A program made the position numbers and the translations under genes. Source: Octopus bimaculoides (taxonomy: Eukaryota). Taken from it: a stretch of DNA of 43,600 nt. The notes under the pieces are model-generated. The model saw only the letters and a list, made by a program, of their open reading frames with translations, did not search any database and had not been told where the DNA came from. Numbering within the stretch: position 1 is the first letter of the stretch; the number at the start of each line of letters is the position of its first letter. The stretch lies in the NCBI RefSeq assembly GCF_001194135.2, contig NC_069003.1:24404115-24447714 (forward strand). The letters run 5' to 3'. This document shows, in pieces, positions 289 through 43,600 of the stretch.

Positions 289-416
289 CGTTAGTTTAAT
301 CTTTGTTCCCTTCGCAACTTCGATCGTCCACAAACAGTTTGTGTTATTCTGGTATAGGCCGCTTGGAAATTTCAAGTTCCCCGTGTTCTGCTTCAGAAGA
401 TGTCTACAGCGAGAAG
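289..416 (-). CDS. Gene 1 exon: N-terminal half of a CUB domain (SRCRHLLKQNTGNLKFPSGLYQNNTNCLWTIEVAKGTKIKLT)
   Basis: Acceptor ttgttttgcag|, donor ACG|gtaagt, phase 1 to 0. The C...G.L..P..Y.NN..C.W.I.V..G.KI.L pattern is the CUB signature. The rest of the gene lies left of the window. Confidence 0.9.
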
Positions 417-2824: not shown

Positions 2825-3502
2825 GAGTAAAAACCTACAGAATTGGTCCCTAGAGCAGTAGAAGAATGTTATTTTCTCGGATGAGTCATCTTTGACCTTA
2901 TTTCCAACCCCCGGCCGAGTATACGTGTGGACTCAGCCAAAAGAAGCATTTGACCCAGACTGCCTTCTTCCAACTGCTAAACATGGAGGAAGATCTGTGA
3001 TGATCTGGGAGGCTATATCTTGGAAATCTATGGCTCAATGGTTTCCCTTTATGGCAGAATTAATAGTCAAGACTATTTAAACATGTTATCTGATAAAATT
3101 CATCCTATGCTTGTAGAACTGTTTCCAGAGGGAAACGCAATCTTTCAGGATAATAATGCACCAATTCACACAGCTAAATTTGTTACTGAATGGCACAAGG
3201 AACATTCTAGTGAAGTTGAACATCTTAGCTGGCCACCACAGTCCCCAGATCTCAATATTATCGAACATTTATGGTGCATTTTAGAAAAACAAGTAAGGAG
3301 TCGATACACCATCATCACTACAAGAACTGGAAACTGTTTTAGCTGAAGAATGGACAAAATTCCTTTGGAAACAATTCAAACTTGTATGAGTCCATAGCTC
3401 GTAGAATTCAAGTTGTAATTACTGCCAAAGTTGATCCTAACCCATATTAAAATTAATTTGTTTGAAATTTCAAGGTGTCTCCATTATTTTGTCCGACCCC
3501 TG
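2825..3502 (+). mobile_element. Tc1-like DNA transposon, 3' half (transposase pseudogene plus right TIR)
   Basis: Translates as VIFSDESS, GRVYVW, KHGGRSVMIW, FQDNNAPIH and WPPQSPDLNIIEHLW, with a stop and frameshifts. TIR end ...ttattttgtccgacccctg. Confidence 0.93.
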
Positions 3503-4356: not shown

Positions 4357-4438
4357 CCCTTGCAAAAAGTTTCCGCTTCAGACCACGTCATTTCTTTAAA
4401 CGAAAATAGGTAACAGTCTCCGAATTTTGCAGTCCATC
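4357..4438 (-). CDS. Gene 1 exon: start of the C-type lectin-like domain ((G)WTAKFGDCYLFSFKEMTWSEAETFCK)
   Basis: Acceptor tctctatttag|, donor GG|gtaagt, phase 1 to 2. GW......CY.F.....TW.EA...C is the CTLD motif. Confidence 0.92.
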
Positions 4439-4679
4439 CTAAATAGAGAAAGAAATAACAAGTATTAACAATGATAATTATTTCTAATATTGGCACAAAA
4501 CCTTAAATTTAAGGGGAGGGATTTAGTCGCTTACATCGACCCCAGTGCTCAACTAGTAGTTATTTTACCGAATCCGAAAGAATCAAAAGCAAAGCTGACG
4601 TTGTTGGAATTTGAATTCAGAATGTAAAGGCGGACGAAATGCTGCTAAGCCCATAACACTGTTGAACGCAAATTTCAAA

Positions 4680-5630
4680 ATTTTGTCCAAAGTGTTAGCA
4701 AAGAGGCTGGTGCTTGTCGTTGAGAAACTGATGGGTGATGCGTAAACGTACGCATTCCAAGCATATCCATCCGCGAAAATCTCCACCTCATGCGATGCAT
4801 CATAGAAAGGGTGAGTGAAGAACTTGGTATGGAGAAGCCTGATCAATTTGGATCAGCCTAAATCTTTCGATAGGGTCTTCCACCAATGCTTGGCGGCCGT
4901 TCTCAAGGCGGTCGTTTTCGATCCCATTTTCCGTGGTTGGAACGCTGCATTGTACAGCAACATTTGCTCGGTAGTTCGAGAGATGGTTACTTGTCGGAAC
5001 CATTCAACATCATGCGTTCGGTCTGGCAAGGGTATCCCCTCTCATCTCTTCTGTATGTATTGGCTCCTGAGCCATTACTGCGAAAATCGGAGGCATTGAG
5101 GGGCATCCCGCGCCAACTAGGACGTGGGCGAACCGTGTCGGCATATGCAGACGACGTCACCGTCATAGTGTCAAACAGTAAGCACATAGACCTGGTCGGC
5201 GCATCTCTGAAAGAATACGAGGTGGTGACAACAGCGAAAATTAACCAAGAAAACTCAGTGAGCCTGCAGCTCAGCACGTGGGGAGGCAGGTCCATGTCGT
5301 CCAAGCCCTCATCAACTTTTTCAAGTTTCACTTGAAAAGGAAAGTGAGGGCAGAAGGGAGTGCTGCCGCCAGCAATTTTGTTAAAAGGTGGGTGAATGTA
5401 GTGCGAATGCACCTCTAGATCGAGTAGATGAAGTGGGGAGGGCACTTGCCCAAGAGGTCATGATGATCGTGGTTTGTGTGGGTTTTCCACGAGCAGTCCC
5501 TGAAAGTCTCTTTCTTTTGGGGATTTAATTCTTATAATTTCCGTTGTTATTCTGTTTATATACTCTTCAATTCCATTCTAATTGTGTTATGTTGTCCTGT
5601 TTCGTCCACGATCTTTATATAAACTCGCAG
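4680..5630 (+). mobile_element. Tx1/L1-clade LINE fragment: RT core fused to C-terminus and 3' UTR
   Basis: LDQPKSFDRV, RSVWQGYPLSSLLYVL and AYADDVT RT motifs. The 5310-5630 segment is similar to 40985-41370 (shared gtgggttttccacgag). Confidence 0.85.
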
Positions 5631-5873: not shown

Positions 5874-6363
5874 TGTGGAGGCGCAATGGCCCAGTGGTTA
5901 GGGCAGTGGACTCGCGGTCATAGATCGCGGTTTCGATTCCCAGACCGGGCGTTGTGAGTGTTTATTGAGCGAAAACATCTGAGGATCCACGAGGATCCGG
6001 CAGGGGATGGTGGCGAACTCTGCTGTACTCTTTCACCACAACTTTCTCTCACTCTTACTTCCTGATTCTGTTGTGCCTGTAATTCAAAGGGTCAGCNNNN
6101 NNNNNNGCGAACTCTGCTGTACTCTTTCACCACAACTTTCTCTCACTCTTACTTCCTGATTATGTTGTGCCTGTAATTCAAAGGGTCAGCCTTGTCACAC
6201 TCTGTGTCACGCTGAATATCCCCGAGAGCTACGTTAAGGGTACACGTGTCTGTGGAGTGCTCAGCCACTTGCACGTTAATTTCACGAGCAGGCTGTTCCG
6301 TTGATCGGATCAACTGGAACCCTCGACGTCGTAAGCGACGGAGTGCCAACAACAACAACAACA
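5874..6363 (+). mobile_element. tRNA-derived SINE family C, (AAC)n tail
   Basis: A box TGGCCCAGTGG, B-box-like GGTTTCGATTCC, TSD ACTTATTAT(C/T)C. Near-identical copy at 39808-40255. Confidence 0.9.
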
Positions 6364-6724
6364 ACTTATTATTCTAACATCGATTGGATGAGAAACATAT
6401 TAGCAGGATTCGAAATAAGAATGTTAATGTATGTAAACCTTGCCATTTTCTTAGTCTATTATTGCCATTTCTTCGAGCAGAGCTTTTATTCATTGATTTA
6501 ATGTCAATTAAAATTAAATTGAATCGTGAATAAATTATTGTTTAAATATTACATTACTGCATCTATAAGTATTCTTGATTATTTTTACAGTCATGTTCAG
6601 TGTTAGAAAACAGAAAAATCATTGCTGATATTACAATGTCAAAATGCCAATCTGAGAGACTTCTAATTTTAGCCCAGTCAAAAATAGAATACCAAATAGA
6701 ACCACGTATAAGACTTACGAATAA

Positions 6725-16099: not shown

Positions 16100-16700
16100 G
16101 ACACTTACCTTCACACCTGGCCACAAGATCATCCCGAAATACATGCGTTGGCGGAATACAAGGGCCAAAGTGAAGGGCATTGGTAGTGGCAATGATTCTT
16201 AATTTATCACCACCTTTGTAGCATGGTATGGGCAAAGTGTGTCTGCCGAGGCAACTAGTAACGATATGTGGCTGAGAAAGAAGATTTATATGGGCGTACA
16301 AATAATAACGTCTACAGAAAATCACAGTACACAACATTTACTATTATCTTTTCAGGGTACGGAAGAAAAAGCCGTGAGCCTAGATTCACAGCATGTTAAT
16401 CGTAGCTGGAATAGAGGCAGCAAAGTAGCAGGAACGTTCGAAAGAGAAAAATGAGACGGTCACAAGGCTAAAGATGCAATGCAGAATACCTAACTGTTAC
16501 GTGTGTGTCTGTAAGGGCCATGAGATGACTCTCTGCCCTAAGGAACATGAAAGTGACCGGAGAGAATGCGGCATACAGTCGTAGATTCAATAAGAATATT
16601 AGGAGGTTGCAGTAGCTGATACTCTCAGAACAACCCCAGTGACAGCTCCGAAATTAACCAAAGGACAATGTCCCTTGTCATCCCCAGAAACCCATAACAT
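16100..16700 (+). mobile_element. Degraded LINE ORF1 (gag-like) remnant with CCHC zinc knuckle
   Basis: 16495-16536 reads CYVCVCKGHEMTLC (CX2CX4HX4C); surrounding frames contain stops. Clade (L1/Tx1-like) is inferred. Confidence 0.6.
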
Positions 16701-36352: not shown

Positions 36353-36657
36353 CAGAAGCATACTGGGGGAGGGGACAACAGGTCTTTATTCGTAGATATA
36401 AATATTTAATTTAACACGTGTACACATACACACATCACGCACACATACACACACACACACACACACATCATGCACGCATACACACAGACATTCACCCCCA
36501 CATCACATATACTAATTAGATACAGCGTAATCAATAGTGGGTTGTAATATATTCTTATTTAAAAAGGAGTTTCAGTTGCTTTATCTTTTGGATCTGCATT
36601 TCCTTTGAACGGCCAAGAATCGAAAGGCTATTTTGTTTCGGAGAAACCAACGCCAGA

Positions 36658-36718
36658 ATGTCACAAACATTATATTTGCTACTTTTGTGTGGACTTTTCG
36701 CCTCAGCTTTGGCTACAT
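36658..36718 (+). CDS. Gene 2 exon 1: signal peptide (MSQTLYLLLLCGLFASALAT)
   Basis: ATG in context ccagaATG, hydrophobic core, small-residue ALA cleavage motif, donor T|gtaagt in phase 1. T plus GT of the next exon gives Cys. Confidence 0.85.
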
Positions 36719-36899
36719 GTAAGTTAGATTATTTCTTTTGGCTATTATATGTTTGATTTGGAGGAGTTGTTGGAAGGATTGACATATCCTAATGTAAATT
36801 TAAATGTAAATTCTATGTTCAGATCCTAACGAGATCGATAGAATAGGTAACGGTCAAGTACATAGATCGGCACAATCGACTGTTCACCAGCCATACAAG

Positions 36900-36960
<61 letters not shown>

Positions 36961-37732
36961 NNNNNNNNNNNNNNNNNNNNNNNNNNNNNNNNNNNNNNNN
37001 NNNNNNNNNNNNNNNNNNNNNNNNNNNNNNNNNNNNNNNNNNNNNNNNNNNNNNNNNNNNNNNNNNNNNNNNNNNNNNNNNNNNNNNNNNNNNNNNNNNN
37101 NNNNNNNNNNNNNNNNNNNNNNNNNNNNNNNNNNNNNNNNNNNNNNNNNNNNNNNNNNNNNNNNNNNNNNNNNNNNNNNNNNNNNNNNNNNNNNNNNNNN
37201 NNNNNNNNNNNNNNNNNNNNNNNNNNNNNNNNNNNNNNNNNNNNNNNNNNNNNNNNNNNNNNNNNNNNNNNNNNNNNNNNNNNNNNNNNNNNNNNNNNNN
37301 NNNNNNNNNNNNNNNNNNNNNNNNNNNNNNNNNNNNNNNNNNNNNNNNNNNNNNNNNNNNNNNNNNNNNNNNNNNNNNNNNNNNNNNNNNNNNNNNNNNN
37401 NNNNNNNNNNNNNNNNNNNNNNNNNNNNNNNNNNNNNNNNNNNNNNNNNNNNNNNNNNNNNNNNNNNNNNNNNNNNNNNNNNNNNNNNNNNNNNNNNNNN
37501 NNNNNNNNNNNNNNNNNNNNNNNNNNNNNNNNNNNNNNNNNNNNNNNNNNNNNNNNNNNNNNNNNNNNNNNNNNNNNNNNNNNNNNNNNNNNNNNNNNNN
37601 NNNNNNNNNNNNNNNNNNNNNNNNNNNNNNNNNNNNNNNNNNNNNNNNNNNNNNNNNNNNNNNNNNNNNNNNNNNNNNNNNNNNNNNNNNNNNNNNNNNN
37701 NNNNNNNNNNNNNNNNNNNNNNNNNNNNNNNN

Positions 37733-37776
<44 letters not shown>

Positions 37777-38403
37777 GGGGGAGGGAACTAGTCGATTACA
37801 TCGACCCCAGTGTTTCACTGGTATTTAATTTATCGACCCCGAAAGCATGAAAGGCAAAGTCTACCTTGGCGGTATTTGAATTCAGAATGTGCCGATTCTG
37901 CCAACTTGCCGCCTTATATATGTATACATAACAAGTTAAAGGGATTAATGAACCAGACAGATACCTATAAACCACTCAGTGTTAAATGAAGTTGGTTAAC
38001 TATATCAAACAATCAGATGCCAATAAACTCAAGTAGAATTCACATCTAAACTAATTCGTCTTGAATGGCAAGTAAATCCGAATATCGCTTTGAAGAATTT
38101 GAAGAAATTCGGAGGAGACATAAGACAACAAGAACCTGAATGGAGAAAGCCACATCTTTAATTGATGTTTATATCATATTACATTACGAATGATCGTTTC
38201 TATTGCGCCAGCATATTTAGATAGAGAAAAATGATATATAAAATACCAGTCAAAATTATATCCTCGAAAATATATGCTAACACAACGTTATCAAGGTAAT
38301 CTAAAATGAGATATATTCAAAGTGGACTAAGAAAATATTTCTAATAGACAAACGTTGATGACGTCAGTAGATAACGCAAGAATGAAAACATAAATATAGA
38401 AAA

Positions 38404-38719
38404 AGATGAGGAATTATGTACATTATTTACATTATTTATATTTGACGGATATTTGTCCTCATCTTGTTTGTTGTTAGCACAACGTTTCCGCTGATAGACC
38501 CTTCAGCCTTCATCAGGTGTCTTGGGGAAATTTCGAACCTGGGTTCTCATTCCTAAGGTATTTTTTAATGTTGTTATTATTATCATTATTATTAAGGTCA
38601 CTGCCTGCAATCGAACTCGAAATCTTGGGGTTAACAGCGCGGGTTACTAACCCCGAGATTCTGAGTTCGATTCCAGGCAGTGACCTTAATAATAACAACA
38701 ACAACATCATAAAAATACC
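38404..38719 (-). mobile_element. Family D element copy 2, fused head-to-head with an inverted partial copy
   Basis: Reverse complement matches copy 1. Arms 38557-38633 and 38648-38719 form an imperfect palindrome centred in the tRNA head. Confidence 0.75.
38476..38521 (-). ncRNA. Minimal type I hammerhead ribozyme motif (degenerate copy)
   Basis: Minus strand GACAC-CTGATGA-A-GGCTG(aagggtctat)CAGCG-GAAAC-GT-T-GTGCT. Confidence 0.62.
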
Positions 38720-39504
38720 ATTGGAAGNNNNNNNNNNNNNNNNNNNNNNNNNNNNNNNNNNNNNNNNNNNNNNNNNNNNNNNNNNNNNNNNNNNNNNNNN
38801 NNNNNNNNNNNNNNNNNNNNNNNNNNNNNNNNNNNNNNNNNNNNNNNNNNNNNNNNNNNNNNNNNNNNNNNNNNNNNNNNNNNNNNNNNNNNNNNNNNNN
38901 NNNNNNNNNNNNNNNNNNNNNNNNNNNNNNNNNNNNNNNNNNNNNNNNNNNNNNNNNNNNNNNNNNNNNNNNNNNNNNNNNNNNNNNNNNNNNNNNNNNN
39001 NNNNNNNNNNNNNNNNNNNNNNNNNNNNNNNNNNNNNNNNNNNNNNNNNNNNNNNNNNNNNNNNNNNNNNNNNNNNNNNNNNNNNNNNNNNNNNNNNNNN
39101 NNNNNNNNNNNNNNNNNNNNNNNNNNNNNNNNNNNNNNNNNNNNNNNNNNNNNNNNNNNNNNNNNNNNNNNNNNNNNNNNNNNNNNNNNNNNNNNNNNNN
39201 NNNNNNNNNNNNNNNNNNNNNNNNNNNNNNNNNNGCAACAAGGATATCCAAAGTTAATGCAGTACGATCGTTTCATGCGACTCCATTTAATTAAGCAATG
39301 TGAACATTACATCAAATGTAAAATGCAGAGCAATCCTCAGCTGCACAAAGATATAGAAATTTAATGAAATTACATTTCAACAGAAGGACATATTTTTATA
39401 ACTACATTTAAACTCTGCAAGTAGAAAAGGAGAATACAAAGAAAAAAAAACTTTTTGACTTAGCCAATATATATTTAACAATCATTTATATGATATTTTT
39501 TCAG

Positions 39505-39642
39505 GTCCAGCTAAATGCTCCTTACCAACTTACGATTGCACACAACCATTTCCTGACTGTCTGTCAAAGGGGGCCACTGTTGTGTGTGTTGAAAATTCTA
39601 AATTTCAATGTGTTATAGAAGTTCCACGTTCTGATCCAATTT
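39505..39642 (+). CDS. Gene 2 exon 2: six-Cys module 1 ((C)PAKCSLPTYDCTQPFPDCLSKGATVVCVENSKFQCVIEVPRSDPI)
   Basis: Acceptor attttttcag|, donor T|gtaagt, phase 1 to 1, 138 nt, open and Cys-rich. Confidence 0.88.
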
Positions 39643-39807
39643 GTAAGTATCTCTATATCAGATTCGACAGTAGTTTGTGTTTTTTCCCCTTTATTTTTTT
39701 GCTCTTTTTATTTTTTGTCTTGGCAAGAAGCTAAGCCTGGCTAATCAAGCTTCCATTATCGCTTGTTGTTTAGTTACTATAATTATACATTCTGTAGGCG
39801 TAAACAT

Positions 39808-40255
39808 GTGGAGGCGCAATGGTCCAGTGGTTAGGACAGCGGACTCGCGGTCATAGGATCGCGGTTGTGAGTGTTTATTGAGCGAAAACACCTAAACCTC
39901 CACGAGGCTCCAGCAGGGGATAGTGGCGAACCCTGCTGTACTCTTTCACCACAACTTTCTCTCACTCTTACNNNNNNNNNNAGCAGGGGATAGTGGCGAA
40001 CCCTGCTGTACTCTTTCACCACAACTTTCTCTCACTCTTACTTCCTGTTTCTGTTGCGCCTGTAATTCAAAGGGTCAGCCTTGTCACTCTGTGTGACGCT
40101 GAATATCTCCGAGAACTACGTTAAGGGTACACGTGTCTGTGGAGTGATCAGCCACTTGTACGTCAATTTCACGAGCAGGCCGTTCCGTTGATCGGATCAA
40201 CTGGAACCCTCGACGTCGTAAGAGACAGAATGCCAACAACAACAACAACAACAAC
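39808..40255 (+). mobile_element. SINE family C, inserted at the head of a family B SINE
   Basis: Perfect 12-bp TSD AGGCGTAAACAT (39796-39807 and 40256-40267). A degenerate family B body follows at 40268-40430. Confidence 0.92.
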
Positions 40256-40518
40256 AGGCGTAAACATAGGTGCATGTTTCAGAAACTCGCTTTTCAACCA
40301 CGCGGTTTCGGGTTCAGTCTCACTGCGCGGCACTTTGGGTAAGTGTACTCTACTATAACGTCGGGTCAACCAAAGCCTTGGGAGTAGATTTGATAGAAGG
40401 AAACTATGCGGAAGCCAGTGGTATATGTGTGTGTGTATGTGCGTATATTTGTGTGGTGTGTATCCATCCATCCGTCTCTCTGTCTGTCAATCTCCTTATA
40501 AACTTGCTATTTTTTCAG

Positions 40519-40860
40519 GTCCTCAGTGTAATGAGCCTGGTTATAAATGTACCGGAATATATTTAGTCGACAACTGCACAGATATGTTATACGTATGTCC
40601 AGACAGGAGCATGTCCATTTATTACTGCGTTGAATACGATAAATCGACAAAACCAGCTATCACAACGACATCCCTTCCCACCACTACTACCACCGCACCG
40701 GAACCAACCACCACTCCTAAACCGACCACCACCCCGGAACCGACCACTACTCCAGAACCGACCACCACCCCGAAACCGACCACCACCCCGGAACCGACTA
40801 CCACCACCACTATGCAAACGACTACCGTGGTGTTACCGACCACCACGACAGAAATGCCAG
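40519..40860 (+). CDS. Gene 2 exon 3: six-Cys module 2 plus Thr/Pro mucin-like stalk
   Basis: Acceptor attttttcag|, donor CCAG|gtaagt, phase 1 to 1, 342 nt. Reads (C)PQCNEPGYKCTGIYLVDNCTDMLYVCPDRSMSIYYCVEY followed by PTTTP[E/K] repeats. Confidence 0.9.
40698..40805 (+). repeat. Coding 18-bp tandem repeat, six copies, encoding P[E/K]PTTT
   Basis: PEPTTTPKPTTTPEPTTTPEPTTTPKPTTTPEPTTT read directly, with synonymous variation between units. Confidence 0.9.
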
Positions 40861-40984
40861 GTAAGTGATTCTAGTGAATAGTAATGATAGGGGAGAAAGG
40901 AGCAGAGGATTAAAGAGCTGAAGGAGGAGGAGGAGGAACAGTAATAGTTATGGCTTACATTGCTCACAAGGGGTTTGAAAGGGC

Positions 40985-41370
40985 TAAAGACAGGCACTTT
41001 CCACTTCGGCAAGTTGAGGGTGGAGAGGTAAGTGTTGCCCTGTAACAAGTTTGTTGAAAGGTGAGTGAATGTTGGAAGAATGGCCAGTGACAACGGACCA
41101 ATTCTGAGCGTGCATCTGTAAACAAAAGAAGAGCTCTTGCCCTGTTGTCCAGACACCAGTGGCTTTTGTGGGGTTTTCCACGAGGTCCTTAAAGCGCCTC
41201 CCCTATTGAGAGTTTTAAATTCTTTAATTTTTAATCGTTATATATATTGTTTACACGTTGTAGAACCCATTGTATCGTCCTGTTTTTGTCTTTTATGTTG
41301 TATGTGTTTTAATGTAATTTTATGTAAGCCCTTGTGGACAATAAACGAATTTATTATTATTATTATTATT
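40985..41370 (+). mobile_element. Tx1-type LINE 3' end with AATAAA and (ATT)n tail
   Basis: Similar to 5310-5500 in both residual coding frame and UTR; simple-repeat tail. Confidence 0.65.
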
Positions 41371-41648
41371 TGTGGAGACGCAATGGCCCAGCGGTTAAGG
41401 CAGCGGACTCGCGGTCGGAGGATCGCGGTTTCGATTCCCAGACCAGGCGTTGTGTTGTGTTTGCTTATTGAACGAAAACATCTAAAGCTCCACGAGGTTC
41501 TCACTCTTTCTTCCTGTTTCTTGAGTAAAGCTGCGGTGGACTGGCGTCCTGTCCAGTTGGGGGATGGAACTCATACGCCATAGAAACCAGGAAACCGGGC
41601 CCATGAGCCTGGCTAAGCTTTAAAAGGGCGCATAAATAAATAAATAAA
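41371..41648 (+). mobile_element. SINE with family C head and a different 3' module, (AAAT)n tail
   Basis: The 5' 150 nt align to family C; the 3' part aligns to 42285-42378. Confidence 0.8.
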
Positions 41649-41673
41649 TTATTATTATTATTATTAATAATAA

Positions 41674-41903
41674 GGCGGCGAGCTGGCAGAATTGTTAGCA
41701 CGCTGAACGAAATGCTGAGCGGTATTTCGCCCGTCGCAACGTTCTGAGTTCAAATCCCGCCGAGGTCGACTTTGCCTTTCATCCTTTCGGGGTCGATAAA
41801 TTAAGTACCAGTTGAACACTGGAGTCGATGTAATCGACTATCCCCCTCTCCCAAAATTTTAGGCCTTGTGCCTATAATAGAAAATATTATTGTTGTTGTT
41901 GTT
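41674..41903 (+). mobile_element. SINE family A (Nin/Deu-domain-like), full length
   Basis: ggcggcgagctggcagaa head, gagttcaaatcc B box, and gactttgcctttcatcctttcggggtcgataaattaagtaccag central domain. Partial or degenerate copies at about 2431-2553(-), 4481-4652(-), 8941-9277(-, two), 19205-19400(-), 19420-19640(-), 30090-30150, 32760-32930, 33060-33245, 34440-34650(-), 34680-34870, 35210-35375 and 37775-37915(-). Confidence 0.85.
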
Positions 41904-41921
41904 CCTATCGGGATTTTATAG

Positions 41922-42076
41922 GTAATCAATGTATAAGAATTCCAGGACTTTTCCTACCTATTCCTAACTTTTGTCTACCGAAAACGCCTGATGATAAATG
42001 CCCATATGCTGTCTTCGAGAAGGACCCGATTCATCAGTGTGAAAATAAGAACTTAGCATGCTGTGTCCTAAAAAAG
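41922..42076 (+). CDS. Gene 2 exon 4: six-Cys module ending in CC ((G)NQCIRIPGLFLPIPNFCLPKTPDDKCPYAVFEKDPIHQCENKNLACCVLKK)
   Basis: Acceptor ggattttatag| in phase 1 matches exon 3; donor AAG|gtaatt in phase 0. The frame is open over unique sequence between two SINEs. Cys spacing C-x13-C-x8-C-x12-C-x6-CC. Confidence 0.78.
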
Positions 42077-42132
42077 GTAATTGTTTTGTTACGAATTTGA
42101 TTGAATTTTTGTTGTTGTTGTTGTTATTTACA

Positions 42133-42390
42133 GTCCAGCGTGGCTTAGTGGTTAGGGTGTCAGCATCATGATCGTAAGACTGTGATTTCGATTCCTGGAC
42201 CGGGCGACGCGCTGTGTTCCTGAGCAAAACACTTCATTTCACGTTGCTCCAGTCCACTCAGCTGGCAAAAATGAGTAATGTTGCGATGGACTGGCGTCCA
42301 GTCCAGCTGGGGAACACATATGCCATTGAAACCAGGAAACCGGGTCCATGAGCCTGGCTAGGCTTTAAAAGGGCGCATTTATATTTTTTT
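42133..42390 (+). mobile_element. tRNA-derived SINE with Meta/V-type central and 3' domains
   Basis: A/B boxes, then tgtgttcctgagcaaaacactt...ctccagtccactcagctg and gcgatggactggcgtcc. Domain naming is from recalled consensus and was not searched. Confidence 0.7.
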
Positions 42391-42399
42391 TATTTTGCA

Positions 42400-42618
42400 T
42401 GAAGGGATGCTGAAAAGTTCCTGGCTTCGAGTAAAAGAAAATACAGGAGGATCAGTTGATTATGATTTCATTCAGTATATTCCCTTCTCAGATTCTCACA
42501 CCTAATGCAGCGATCCTTCAGTTTTTCTAAGCCCTGTAAAAGAACTCGGAAGGTTAGGCCTCCAACTAAGCGTTTCGCTATGCCCCTAAAGCCAGTAACA
42601 CTTTTCACCACCCCATCG
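42400..42618 (-). mobile_element. Second copy of the mariner MITE, inverted
   Basis: Reverse complement aligns with 15327-15533. TIRs gaagggatgctgaaaagttcctggc and gccagtaacacttttcaccaccccatcg|TA. Confidence 0.8.
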
Positions 42619-42732
42619 TACATGGAGGGTTACAAAAAAAATAGAAAGGAAATAATCATAAAAACAAAGCGAAAAATATCTGCCTAGTGATCGATCTATA
42701 TACCTGTTTATCTGTCTGTGTGTCTGTATGTA

Positions 42733-42830
42733 CAAAGGTTGGACAAAATAATGGAAACATCCTGCTAAACGGCAATTTTATTATTTAGTACAGAGCTGGT
42801 TCGCCTTTGATTTAGTTAATTTGATTTAGA
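42733..42830 (+). mobile_element. Tc1-like left TIR fragment
   Basis: TA|CAAAGGTTGGACAAAATAATGGAAACA is similar to the TIRs at 3502 and 18301. Confidence 0.65.
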
Positions 42831-43269
42831 CGTGTGCGTATATGTATGTGTGTGCGTTTGTGTGTGCGTGTATGTATGTGTGTGCGTGCGTGTGCGTATG
42901 TGTGTGTGAGTGCATGTATGTATGTATGTGCGTGTGAGCGTGTATGTGTGCGTGTGTGTATGTAAAGATAAATCACATAAAGAGCAATCACCGAAGAAAG
43001 AAAGAAAGAGAGAGAGAGAGAAAGACGGAAAGAAAAGAAGAGAAGAGAAGAAAAGAAAATGTAAGAAATAGAAACAAGAAGTGTGGCGCCACTCTACAAT
43101 TGCATAGCCATTGCTTGGTGTGCGACCATGCTACAGCTTTAATTTTGTGGACGCCTCTTTTTTTTATCGAACCGCTAAATCATGGGAACGTTCACAAACA
43201 CTGCTTGTCAAGCGGTCATAGGGACAAACGCACGCACGCCCACACACACTGATACACACAGACGCGCGC

Positions 43270-43343
43270 GCACACACACACACACATACAAATACATCCA
43301 TACATACATATATATATATACATACATACATACATACATACAT

Positions 43344-43379
<36 letters not shown>

Positions 43380-43387
43380 ACATACAT

Positions 43388-43432
<45 letters not shown>

Positions 43433-43540
43433 CATACATACACACATATATATATATATACATACATACATACACACATATATATATATACATACATACA
43501 TACATACACACATATATATATATATATACATACATACATA

Positions 43541-43571
<31 letters not shown>

Positions 43572-43600
43572 ACATACATACACATATATATATATATATA
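43270..43600. repeat. Higher-order (TACA)n-CA-(TA)n compound tandem array
   Basis: Direct reading; runs off the window end. Confidence 0.9.

What the first reader, a model, noticed from the sequence alone, without database searches (positions are those of the whole stretch)
36658..42076. Unrecognised modular secreted protein: signal peptide, two six-Cys repeats, mucin stalk, defensin/clip-like module
Four exons join in frame through phase-1 introns with canonical GT-AG sites; three of the four are absent from the ORF track. The product has a signal peptide, 18 cysteines in three exon-delimited modules and a Thr/Pro-rich stalk. I cannot match this architecture to a named protein. Phase-1-bounded modules suggest assembly by exon shuffling. 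Inference: a lineage-specific mucus, egg-coat, skin or salivary protein that presents small disulfide-rich domains on an O-glycosylated stalk.
Basis: partly seen in the sequence, partly recalled or inferred. Interest (0 to 1): 0.72.

Follow-up and report, generated by a model that had tools for sequence, protein, structure and literature searches.

The report
Orphan secreted cysteine-rich mucin-like gene
The four exons form a real spliced animal gene for a secreted protein that carries small disulfide-rich domains on a sugar-coated Thr/Pro stalk; one distant relative exists in a public sequencing run, none of its domains matches a known family, and this kind of protein is common and only moderately interesting.

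Summary
Exons 36658-36718, 39505-39642, 40519-40860 and 41922-42076 join in frame through three phase-1 GT-AG introns. The 232-residue product has a signal peptide, 18 mature cysteines in three six-Cys modules, and a 73-residue Thr/Pro stalk. All three assembly gaps lie in introns, at least 243 nt from any exon, so they cannot affect the frame.

The gene is not a chance ORF. An exhaustive HMMER search found one relative, P0013 (E = 4e-13, 39% identity). It is an uninterrupted ORF on a Logan contig with the same module order, and all 18 cysteines are conserved. The alignment runs straight across the exon 2/3 and 3/4 junctions. Differences between the stalk repeats fall almost entirely on third codon positions.

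No module matches Pfam, PDB sequences or PDB folds, so the "defensin/clip-like" label is not supported. The 3' end is open. There is no stop at 42076 and no poly(A) signal before the window ends. The relative carries a second stalk and a second C-terminal module.

The most likely product is a monomeric, O-glycosylated extracellular protein of mucus or another secreted matrix. Tissue and ligand are unknown. It is a new variant of a known kind, of modest interest.

The parts
36556..36565 (+). TATA-like box (TATTTAAAAA), 102 nt upstream of the ATG; possible core promoter
   Evidence: Read directly from the sequence. No upstream ATG lies between about 36590 and 36658. Promoter function is an inference.
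36658..36718 (+). Exon 1: start codon (A at -3) and a 20-residue signal peptide, MSQTLYLLLLCGLFASALA|T, plus the first base of the Cys21 codon; donor GTAAGT, phase 1
   Evidence: The hydrophobic core is L5-L18 and the A-L-A at -3/-1 fits the von Heijne cleavage rule (established knowledge; SignalP was not run). The split codon T|GT gives Cys21, which is conserved as the first Cys of the relative's extended ORF. The link to exon 2 spans two assembly gaps.
36719..39504 (+). Intron 1 (phase 1), containing assembly gaps 36961-37732 and 38728-39234 and interspersed repeats
   Evidence: A (TA)n microsatellite flanks gap 1. A palindromic repeat at 38550-38726 flanks gap 2. A hidden exon inside the gaps cannot be excluded.
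39505..39642 (+). Exon 2 = module 1 (six Cys): C-PAK-C-SLPTYD-C-TQPFPD-C-LSKGATVV-C-VENSKFQ-C; phase 1-1 symmetric, 138 nt
   Evidence: Homologous to P0013 residues 2-37 ('YDC.Q.FP.CLSK' conserved).
39643..40518 (+). Intron 2 (phase 1), containing the 10-N gap 39972-39981 inside an interspersed repeat
   Evidence: 39912-39971 is 100% identical to 39982-40041, and the element is 84-96% identical to another copy at 5874-6365, which has the same kind of 10-N gap.
40519..40640 (+). Exon 3, first part = module 2 (six Cys): C-PQ-C-NEPGYK-C-TGIYLVDN-C-TDMLYV-C-PDRSMSIYY-C-VEYD; a diverged repeat of module 1
   Evidence: hhalign of module 1 against module 2 gives E = 0.0033 with cysteines 2-6 aligned. 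'VCPD...YYCV' is conserved in P0013.
40641..40860 (+). Exon 3, second part = Thr/Pro (PTS, mucin-like) stalk of 73 residues (36 Thr, 16 Pro), with a core of six P[EK]PTTT units; donor GTAAGT, phase 1
   Evidence: TRF finds an 18-nt period, 6.5 copies, at 40689-40805. Pairwise differences between units by codon position are 8/0/32, so nearly all are synonymous. O-glycosylation is inferred.
40861..41921 (+). Intron 3 (phase 1), filled with interspersed repeats
41922..42076 (+). Exon 4 = module 3 (six Cys): C-x13-C-x8-C-x12-C-x6-CC, followed by VLKK; ends at a GTAATT donor in phase 0
   Evidence: Homologous to both C-terminal modules of P0013 (E = 7e-8 and 2e-7). The 'PG' spanning the exon 3/4 split codon is conserved. 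The AF2 model has pLDDT 79 and three beta-strands.
42077..42100 (+). Alternative 3' end: if the donor at 42077 is not used, read-through adds VIVLLRI and a TGA stop at 42098-42100
   Evidence: No AATAAA or ATTAAA occurs in 42077-43600, and no further stalk or module exon is visible in the readable window.

Best explanation
This is a real, apparently intact protein-coding gene of an animal genome, with at least four exons and a 3' end that is not resolved inside the window.

The product enters the secretory pathway through a 19-residue signal peptide. Each ~45-55-residue module carries six cysteines. Cysteine numbers are even throughout and no cysteine lies in the stalk. The inference is that each module closes three internal disulfides and no cysteine is left free for polymerisation. 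The dense TTTP[EK]P stalk is the kind of sequence that Golgi GalNAc-transferases O-glycosylate, which would make it a stiff, extended, protease-resistant spacer.

The mature protein would then be a monomeric 'dumbbell'. A tandem pair of related N-terminal modules and one or more C-terminal modules of a second, unrelated type are held apart by a glycosylated rod. The most likely role is as a binding or bridging component of mucus or another secreted extracellular layer.

Shown here: gene structure, module architecture, conservation and coding constraint. Inferred: signal-peptide cleavage, disulfide pairing, glycosylation, monomeric state, tissue and ligand.
For: Gene model: canonical sites and phases. 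Three of the 14 + strand GTAAGT hexamers sit at exon ends. The exons are unique sequence while the introns are repeat-rich.

Homologue: P0013 was the only credible hit among 1.84 billion representatives (E = 4.3e-13). It is encoded as an uninterrupted 318-codon ORF on Logan contig L001. Its order is module 1, module 2, PTS stalk, module 3, PTS stalk, module 3, stop.

Module-level matches: BLASTP of modules 1+2 gives E = 2e-14 in a single HSP across the exon 2/3 junction. Module 3 matches both C-terminal copies at E = 7e-8 and 2e-7. All 18 mature Cys are conserved once the L001 ORF is extended upstream in frame.

Coding constraint: the stalk repeat units differ 8/0/32 times at codon positions 1/2/3.

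Foldability: AF2 on module 3 gives pLDDT 79 with a three-stranded sheet.

Secretion: P0013 ends a few residues after its last module with no transmembrane segment.
Against: There is no direct transcript evidence for the window gene itself.

The relative's contig is odd at its 5' end. A stop lies 19 codons upstream of its first Cys, there is no signal peptide in frame, and a 149-codon ORF lies on the opposite strand. Whether L001 is cDNA, intron-retaining RNA, genomic DNA or a chimera is therefore unknown.

Exon 1 is joined to exon 2 only through scaffolding across two gaps.

The N-terminal modules fold poorly in single-sequence AF2 (pLDDT 30-44).

The family has only two known members, so function is argued from architecture alone. 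The stalk is short (73 residues) compared with classical mucins.
Confidence: 0.7

Rival explanations
1. It is a matrix or cuticle protein analogous to invertebrate peritrophins and intestinal mucins. The six-Cys modules would bind a polysaccharide such as chitin, and the PTS stalk would space them, cross-linking a chitinous lining.
For: The layout (six-Cys domain, Thr/Pro linker, six-Cys domain) is the same as in CBM14-PTS proteins. Such proteins were pulled in by the stalk, for example P0010 with PF01607 and P0003. Module 3 has conserved aromatic and proline positions ('CP.P[VI]F...P') and a predicted small beta-sheet.
Against: No CBM14 or any other Pfam hit at E <= 10 for any module of either protein. 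The Cys spacing differs from CBM14, which has no terminal CC. Foldseek found no chitin-binding fold.
Confidence: 0.15
2. It is an immune or regulatory effector. The C-terminal module would be a defensin-like or clip-like domain that acts on microbes or on protease cascades, possibly after release from the stalk.
For: The pattern of six Cys ending in CC (C...C...C...C...CC) recalls beta-defensins, big defensins and clip domains (from general knowledge). The protein is secreted. The predicted fold is a small beta-sheet.
Against: Pfam CLIP and defensin models do not match at E <= 10. A PDB sequence profile search returns only chance hits. The best Foldseek hit has E = 5.6 and is not a defensin or clip structure. 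The spacing 13/8/12/6/0 differs from the defensin spacing of about 6/3-4/9-13/4-7/0 (from general knowledge). The module is not cationic, with 6 K/R against 6 D/E. There is no conserved dibasic processing site, since the residues after the CC read VLKK, VLKP and SLRKQ.
Confidence: 0.1
3. The window copy is a truncated, mis-scaffolded or non-functional member of the family: a partial gene or young pseudogene rather than an expressed gene.
For: There is no stop codon at the end of the model and no poly(A) signal within the window. The exons lie on three contigs joined by estimated gaps. No identical or near-identical protein is present in the searched collections.
Against: All four exons are open. 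All 18 Cys and the family motifs are intact. The splice sites are near-consensus. The stalk repeats show synonymous-biased variation. Absence from the databases may simply reflect poor coverage of this organism.
Confidence: 0.1
4. The four exons are chance open frames with fortuitous splice-like sites, and there is no gene.
For: Part of the exon 3 ORF is low-complexity ACC-rich repeat that is open in several frames.
Against: A homologue has the same module order and all cysteines conserved. GTAAGT donors coincide with exon ends in the right phase. The repeats show a codon-position bias.
Confidence: 0.02

Closest known systems
Logan contig SRR25158133_23453 product P0013 (uncharacterised, unnamed; the only relative found)
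   Same: It has the same three module types in the same order, all 18 Cys, and shared motifs: YDC[ST]Q.FP[DE]CLSK, VCPD...YYCV and PG..C...CLP.T...CP...F...P...C...CC.L[KR]. A Thr/Pro/Ser stalk follows module 2. It shows no transmembrane segment.
   Different: Identity is only 39%. P0013 has a second stalk and a second copy of module 3. Its two module 3 copies are about 65% identical to each other by my hand count, against 37-39% to the window's copy. The duplication may therefore be specific to its lineage. Its ORF is not interrupted where the window gene has introns. Organism and library type are unknown.
Invertebrate intestinal mucins / peritrophins (CBM14 - PTS - CBM14 proteins)
   Same: These are secreted proteins in which small six-Cys domains alternate with Thr/Pro-rich O-glycosylated linkers, and the domains have even Cys counts.
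   Different: The domains here are not CBM14 (Pfam negative). The Cys spacing differs, and no chitin binding has been shown.
Clip domains and beta-/big defensins (six Cys ending in CC)
   Same: Module 3 has six Cys with an adjacent C-terminal pair, is about 50 residues long, and is predicted to form a small beta-sheet.
   Different: It gives no sequence or fold match. Its spacing is different and it is not cationic. It is not attached to a serine protease as clip domains are.
Gel-forming and secreted mucins (PTS domains flanked by Cys-rich domains)
   Same: A PTS tandem-repeat region is encoded by repeats whose period is a multiple of 3 and is flanked by Cys-rich globular parts. The protein carries a signal peptide.
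   Different: No VWD, C8, TIL, CK, SEA or trefoil domain is present. The stalk has only 73 residues. No unpaired Cys is evident for polymerisation.

Membership tests
Clip domain (Pfam PF12032 CLIP) | Sequence match to the CLIP profile | tested here: not met
   hmmscan against Pfam-A at E <= 10 gave no CLIP hit for module 3 of the window protein or for either module 3 copy of P0013.
Clip domain (Pfam PF12032 CLIP) | Fold similar to solved clip domains | tested here: not met
   Foldseek of the pLDDT-79 module 3 model against PDB gave a best E of 5.6, and no hit was a clip domain. Foldseek has limited sensitivity for very small disulfide-rich domains.
Clip domain (Pfam PF12032 CLIP) | N-terminal to a trypsin-like serine protease or protease homologue domain | tested here: not met
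   No protease domain is present in the window product or in the complete C-terminus of P0013.
Beta-defensin / big defensin | Profile match and characteristic Cys spacing (C-x4-8-C-x3-5-C-x9-13-C-x4-7-CC; from general knowledge) | tested here: not met
   No Pfam defensin hit at E <= 10. The observed spacing is 13/8/12/6/0. The PDB profile search gave only chance hits.
Beta-defensin / big defensin | Disulfide connectivity C1-C5, C2-C4, C3-C6 | not testable with these tools
   Model coordinates are not returned, and the test needs disulfide mapping by mass spectrometry.
Chitin-binding peritrophin-A domain (CBM14, PF01607) | Profile match with six Cys and conserved aromatic residues | tested here: not met
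   No hit at E <= 10 for any module. Foldseek was negative.
Mucin-like (PTS-domain) secreted protein | Signal peptide plus a Ser/Thr/Pro-rich tandem-repeat region | tested here: met
   The 73-residue stalk is 52% Ser+Thr and 22% Pro. It is encoded by an 18-nt repeat with 6.5 copies. The N-terminal hydrophobic leader carries an AxA site.
Mucin-like (PTS-domain) secreted protein | Dense O-glycosylation of the repeat region | not testable with these tools
   This needs NetOGlyc-type prediction or glycoproteomics. It is inferred here from the TTTP context.
Gel-forming mucin | VWD-C8-TIL assemblies and a C-terminal cystine knot | tested here: not met
   No such Pfam domains were found.
New family defined by the window protein and P0013 | Order module 1, module 2, PTS, module 3, with 18 conserved Cys and the shared motifs | tested here: met

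The most novel reading that the evidence does not exclude
Modules 1/2 and module 3 may be two previously undescribed disulfide-rich domain families, possibly new folds. They would be restricted to a narrow animal lineage and assembled, through phase-1 intron duplication and shuffling, into a new class of small non-polymerising mucin-like proteins with a lineage-specific extracellular role such as adhesion, mucus organisation or gamete/egg-coat interaction.
Probability: 0.4. Interest if true: 0.45.

Novelty: new variant of a known kind. Interest (0 to 1): 0.33.

Why it matters
The gene appears to be missing from every protein collection searched. Nothing closer than 39% identity turned up among 1.84 billion cluster representatives. 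It shows how an unannotated, lineage-restricted secreted gene can be recovered from raw sequence by splice-phase logic alone.

If the two module types are new disulfide-rich domains, they add to the catalogue of extracellular building blocks that spread by phase-1 exon duplication. They also give a handle (profile HMMs) for finding relatives in mollusc transcriptomes.

In practical terms the gene is a candidate component of mucus, adhesive or egg-coat secretions. Nothing here points to an unusual mechanism, and orphan Cys-rich/PTS proteins are common in invertebrates.

Tried and rejected
- **Full-length protein search.** All 12 hits were Thr/Pro low-complexity matches (checked) and were rejected as homologues.
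- **Stalk-less word-indexed searches.** These gave no hits, and P0013 itself was not retrieved, so that index is uninformative for this family.
- **P0014 (665 aa, E = 1e-6).** It is a tandem-repeat protein whose score sums nine weak matches to 'LSKGATVVC'. It has no shared Cys framework and was rejected as spurious.
- **Pfam on all modules and on P0013.** Nothing was found.
- **PDB sequence profiles.** Only chance hits appeared, such as the antibody 'YYC' motif and a Kelch protein.
- **AF2 full-length, single sequence.** pLDDT was 46, and Foldseek on it was meaningless.
- **Foldseek on the module 3 model.** No significant match.
- **hhalign of modules 1/2 against module 3.** The two module types are unrelated.
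- **tblastn and profile HMM scans of the window for further module copies.** Only the exons themselves were found.
- **Exact look-up of the exon 3 ORF in public assemblies.** Not on record.
- **JGI metagenome scan with family patterns.** No relatives.
- **Rfam and ARAGORN on the window.** Nothing was found, and the tRNA-derived appearance of the intronic repeats stays unconfirmed.
- **Literature searches for the run accession and for cephalopod Cys-rich mucin-like proteins.** Nothing identified the family or the sample.
- **Cluster look-up of the L001 minus-strand ORF and Pfam on it.** Nothing was found.
- **Alternative start at ATG 40425 for a single-exon protein.** This was rejected because the relative has module 1 directly before module 2 in one ORF.

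Full report
**1. Observation**

| Exon | Coordinates | Length | Upstream feature | Downstream feature |
|---|---|---|---|---|
| 1 | 36658-36718 | 61 nt | ATG with A at -3 | GTAAGT |
| 2 | 39505-39642 | 138 nt | ttttttcag | GTAAGT |
| 3 | 40519-40860 | 342 nt | ttttttcag | GTAAGT |
| 4 | 41922-42076 | 155 nt | ttttatag | GTAATT |

The exons join into 696 nt, or 232 codons, with no stop, and all three introns are phase 1. The product is:

- MSQTLYLLLLCGLFASALA|T, the signal peptide (hydrophobic core, A-x-A at -3/-1);
- module 1, with six Cys;
- module 2, with six Cys;
- a 73-residue stalk with 36 Thr and 16 Pro;
- module 3, with six Cys ending in CC.

**2. Assembly gaps**

Two gaps (36961-37732 and 38728-39234) lie in intron 1. 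The third (39972-39981) lies in intron 2. The closest exon edge is 243 nt from a gap. The reading frame is carried from exon to exon by splicing, so the unknown gap lengths cannot alter it.

Gap 1 sits in a (TA)n microsatellite. Gap 3 is flanked by a perfect 60-nt duplication, 39912-39971 = 39982-40041, inside an interspersed repeat. That looks like an unmerged contig overlap rather than missing sequence.

Two uncertainties remain. An extra exon could be hidden in the roughly 1.3 kb of unread intron 1. Exon 1 lies on a different contig from exon 2, so that join depends on the scaffolding. For exons 2-4, order and orientation are independently supported by colinearity with the homologue described below.

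**3. Is it more than chance?**

Several independent lines say yes.

- Only 14 GTAAGT hexamers occur on the + strand of the 43.6-kb window. Three sit exactly at the ends of exons 1-3 in the required phase.
- The exons are unique sequence, while the introns are packed with interspersed repeats that have other copies in the window.
- The stalk is encoded by an 18-nt tandem repeat. Its six P[EK]PTTT units differ pairwise 8, 0 and 32 times at codon positions 1, 2 and 3. Almost all variation is therefore synonymous in the proposed frame, which is a coding signature.
- There is a homologue.

**4. The homologue**

Word-indexed searches failed. The full-length query drew only Thr/Pro low-complexity hits, and the stalk-less query drew nothing.

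The exhaustive HMMER scan of 1.84 billion cluster representatives, run with the stalk-less product, found P0013. It is 318 aa, with E = 4.3e-13 and 39% identity. It is a singleton from a Logan assembly of run SRR25158133, encoded on a 2084-nt contig, L001. Its uninterrupted ORF reads module 1, module 2, Thr/Pro/Ser stalk, module 3, second stalk, second module 3, stop.

- BLASTP of the window's modules 1+2 against P0013 gives E = 2e-14 as a single HSP that runs straight through the window's exon 2/3 junction.
- Module 3 matches both C-terminal copies, at E = 7e-8 and 2e-7. The 'PG' that straddles the exon 3/4 split codon is conserved.
- Extending the L001 ORF upstream in frame restores the first cysteine, so all 18 mature cysteines align.

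A second hit, P0014, is a tandem-repeat protein whose score is the sum of nine weak matches. I regard it as spurious.

**5. Caveat on L001**

The 5' end of L001 is odd. A stop lies 19 codons before the first Cys and no signal peptide is in frame. The sequence just upstream looks like a phase-1 acceptor (ttttttttaacgttttaactgacaatgttaaag|CT). A short ATG exon with a GTAAGT phase-1 donor exists at 175-217. A GC-richer 149-codon ORF runs on the opposite strand at 1-447.

The contig may be an intron-1-retaining transcript, genomic DNA of an intron-poor gene, or an assembly chimera. I could not identify the run's organism or library type. Whichever it is, the uninterrupted ORF validates the order and frame of the window's modules. 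I do not count it as direct proof of splicing.

**6. What the modules are**

Modules 1 and 2 share the framework C-x2-4-C-x6-C-x6-8-C-x6-9-C-x7-10-C, with [YF]-x-C-[ST] and YYC-V motifs. Profile-profile comparison gives E = 0.0033, and the raw pairwise score beats 97.8% of shuffles. They are probably diverged duplicates. Module 3 is unrelated to them.

No module of either protein hits Pfam at E <= 10. Profile searches of all PDB sequences give only chance hits.

Single-sequence AF2 on the full protein is poor overall, with pLDDT 46 and the N-terminal modules at 30-44. Module 3 alone, with P0013 as a second alignment row, reaches pLDDT 79 with three beta-strands. Foldseek against PDB finds nothing better than E = 5.6, and the same is true for the full model.

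The 'defensin/clip-like' label therefore fails every membership test I could run. It remains only a Cys-pattern resemblance.

**7. The 3' end**

The model ends at a moderate donor (AAG|GTAATT) in phase 0 with no stop. Read-through would add VIVLLRI and a TGA at 42098-42100.

There is no AATAAA or ATTAAA between 42077 and the window end. No further stalk-like or module-like frame is visible there either. P0013 continues after 'CCVLKP' with a second stalk and module.

However, the two module 3 copies of P0013 are much closer to each other (about 65% by my hand count) than to the window's copy (37-39%). That duplication may therefore be lineage-specific. I lean towards the gene continuing beyond 43600, but this is unresolved.

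**8. Mechanism (inferred)**

- The signal peptide directs the protein into the ER.
- Each six-Cys module forms three internal disulfides. Cys counts are even and none lies in the stalk, so there is no obvious basis for polymerisation.
- The TTTP[EK]P stalk is O-GalNAc-glycosylated in the Golgi and becomes a stiff spacer.
- The secreted product is a monomeric dumbbell with two kinds of small binding modules. Its most likely role is as a component of mucus or another secreted layer.

The closest architectural analogue is the invertebrate peritrophin / intestinal mucin design, in which six-Cys chitin-binding domains alternate with PTS linkers. The domains here are not CBM14.

The 1-1 phase symmetry of exons 2 and 3, and the phase-1 start of exon 4, fit module duplication and shuffling through introns. 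That is an inference from established rules, not something tested here.

**9. Novelty and score**

The kind of protein is familiar. The specific modules have no recognised family, and only one relative was found. Database coverage of this organism is evidently poor, so 'orphan' status may shrink once mollusc transcriptomes are searched. I rate it a new variant of a known kind, with interest about 0.33.

**10. Surroundings**

The rest of the window holds a minus-strand gene with a CUB-domain exon at 289-416 (Pfam E = 5.7e-5). It also holds further candidate exons at 4357-4501 and 16109-16271, and transposon fragments: DDE_3 at 3020-3346 and RVT_1 at 4886-5335. No paralogue of the finding is present.

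Noticed in passing
window 289-416 (-), 4357-4501 (-), 16109-16271 (-): These are candidate spliced exons of a second gene on the minus strand, each with a pyrimidine-tract/AG acceptor and a GTAAGT donor. The 289-416 exon encodes the start of a CUB domain (Pfam PF00431, E = 5.7e-5, above the gathering score). The 4357-4501 exon ('GWTAKFGDCYLFSFKEMTWSEAETFCK') looks like the start of a C-type lectin domain, but Pfam did not confirm it.
   Followed up: partly
window 3020-3346 (+) and 4886-5335 (+): Transposable-element fragments are present: a DDE_3 (mariner/Tc1-type) transposase C-terminus (Pfam E = 1.8e-12) and a reverse-transcriptase fragment (RVT_1, E = 2.8e-6, just below the gathering score).
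   Followed up: partly
window 39912-40041 and 6000-6152: The 10-N gaps at 39972-39981 and 6097-6106 lie in two copies of the same interspersed repeat. Gap 39972-39981 is flanked by a 60-nt exact duplication. The alignments around 6097-6106 point to a similar overlap there. This looks like a systematic failure to merge overlapping contig ends, so no sequence is really missing.
   Followed up: partly
window 37777-37890, 41672-41884, 39807-40252, 41357-41633, 42130-42380 and many sites upstream: Several families of short interspersed repeats (SINE-like, some with tRNA-like box motifs by eye) fill the introns and have 5-10 copies each in the window. ARAGORN and Rfam recognise none of them.
   Followed up: partly
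L001 1-537: The 5' part of the homologue's contig does not encode a signal peptide in frame. It contains an acceptor-like site at 520/521, a possible mini-exon at 175-217 (MFSCLMGILGLMRQ, GTAAGT donor, phase 1), and a GC-rich (50%) 149-codon ORF on the opposite strand with no Pfam match. The contig could be a retained intron, genomic DNA or a chimeric assembly.
   Followed up: partly
P0014: This 665-aa protein is made of about 12 tandem copies of a ~50-residue unit (CRYPVYRLSTKGLTIVCLQVSSLSAIYQGPDHCMFAGVQFIGYLPRAWPLYV). It scored E = 1e-6 only by summing weak repeats and is probably a translated satellite rather than a relative.
   Followed up: no
window 28783-29486 (-): Long His-rich, Thr-rich and Val-rich open frames lie on both strands around gap 29133-29332. 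They are low-complexity CAT/CAC-type repeats and show no sign of being a gene.
   Followed up: no
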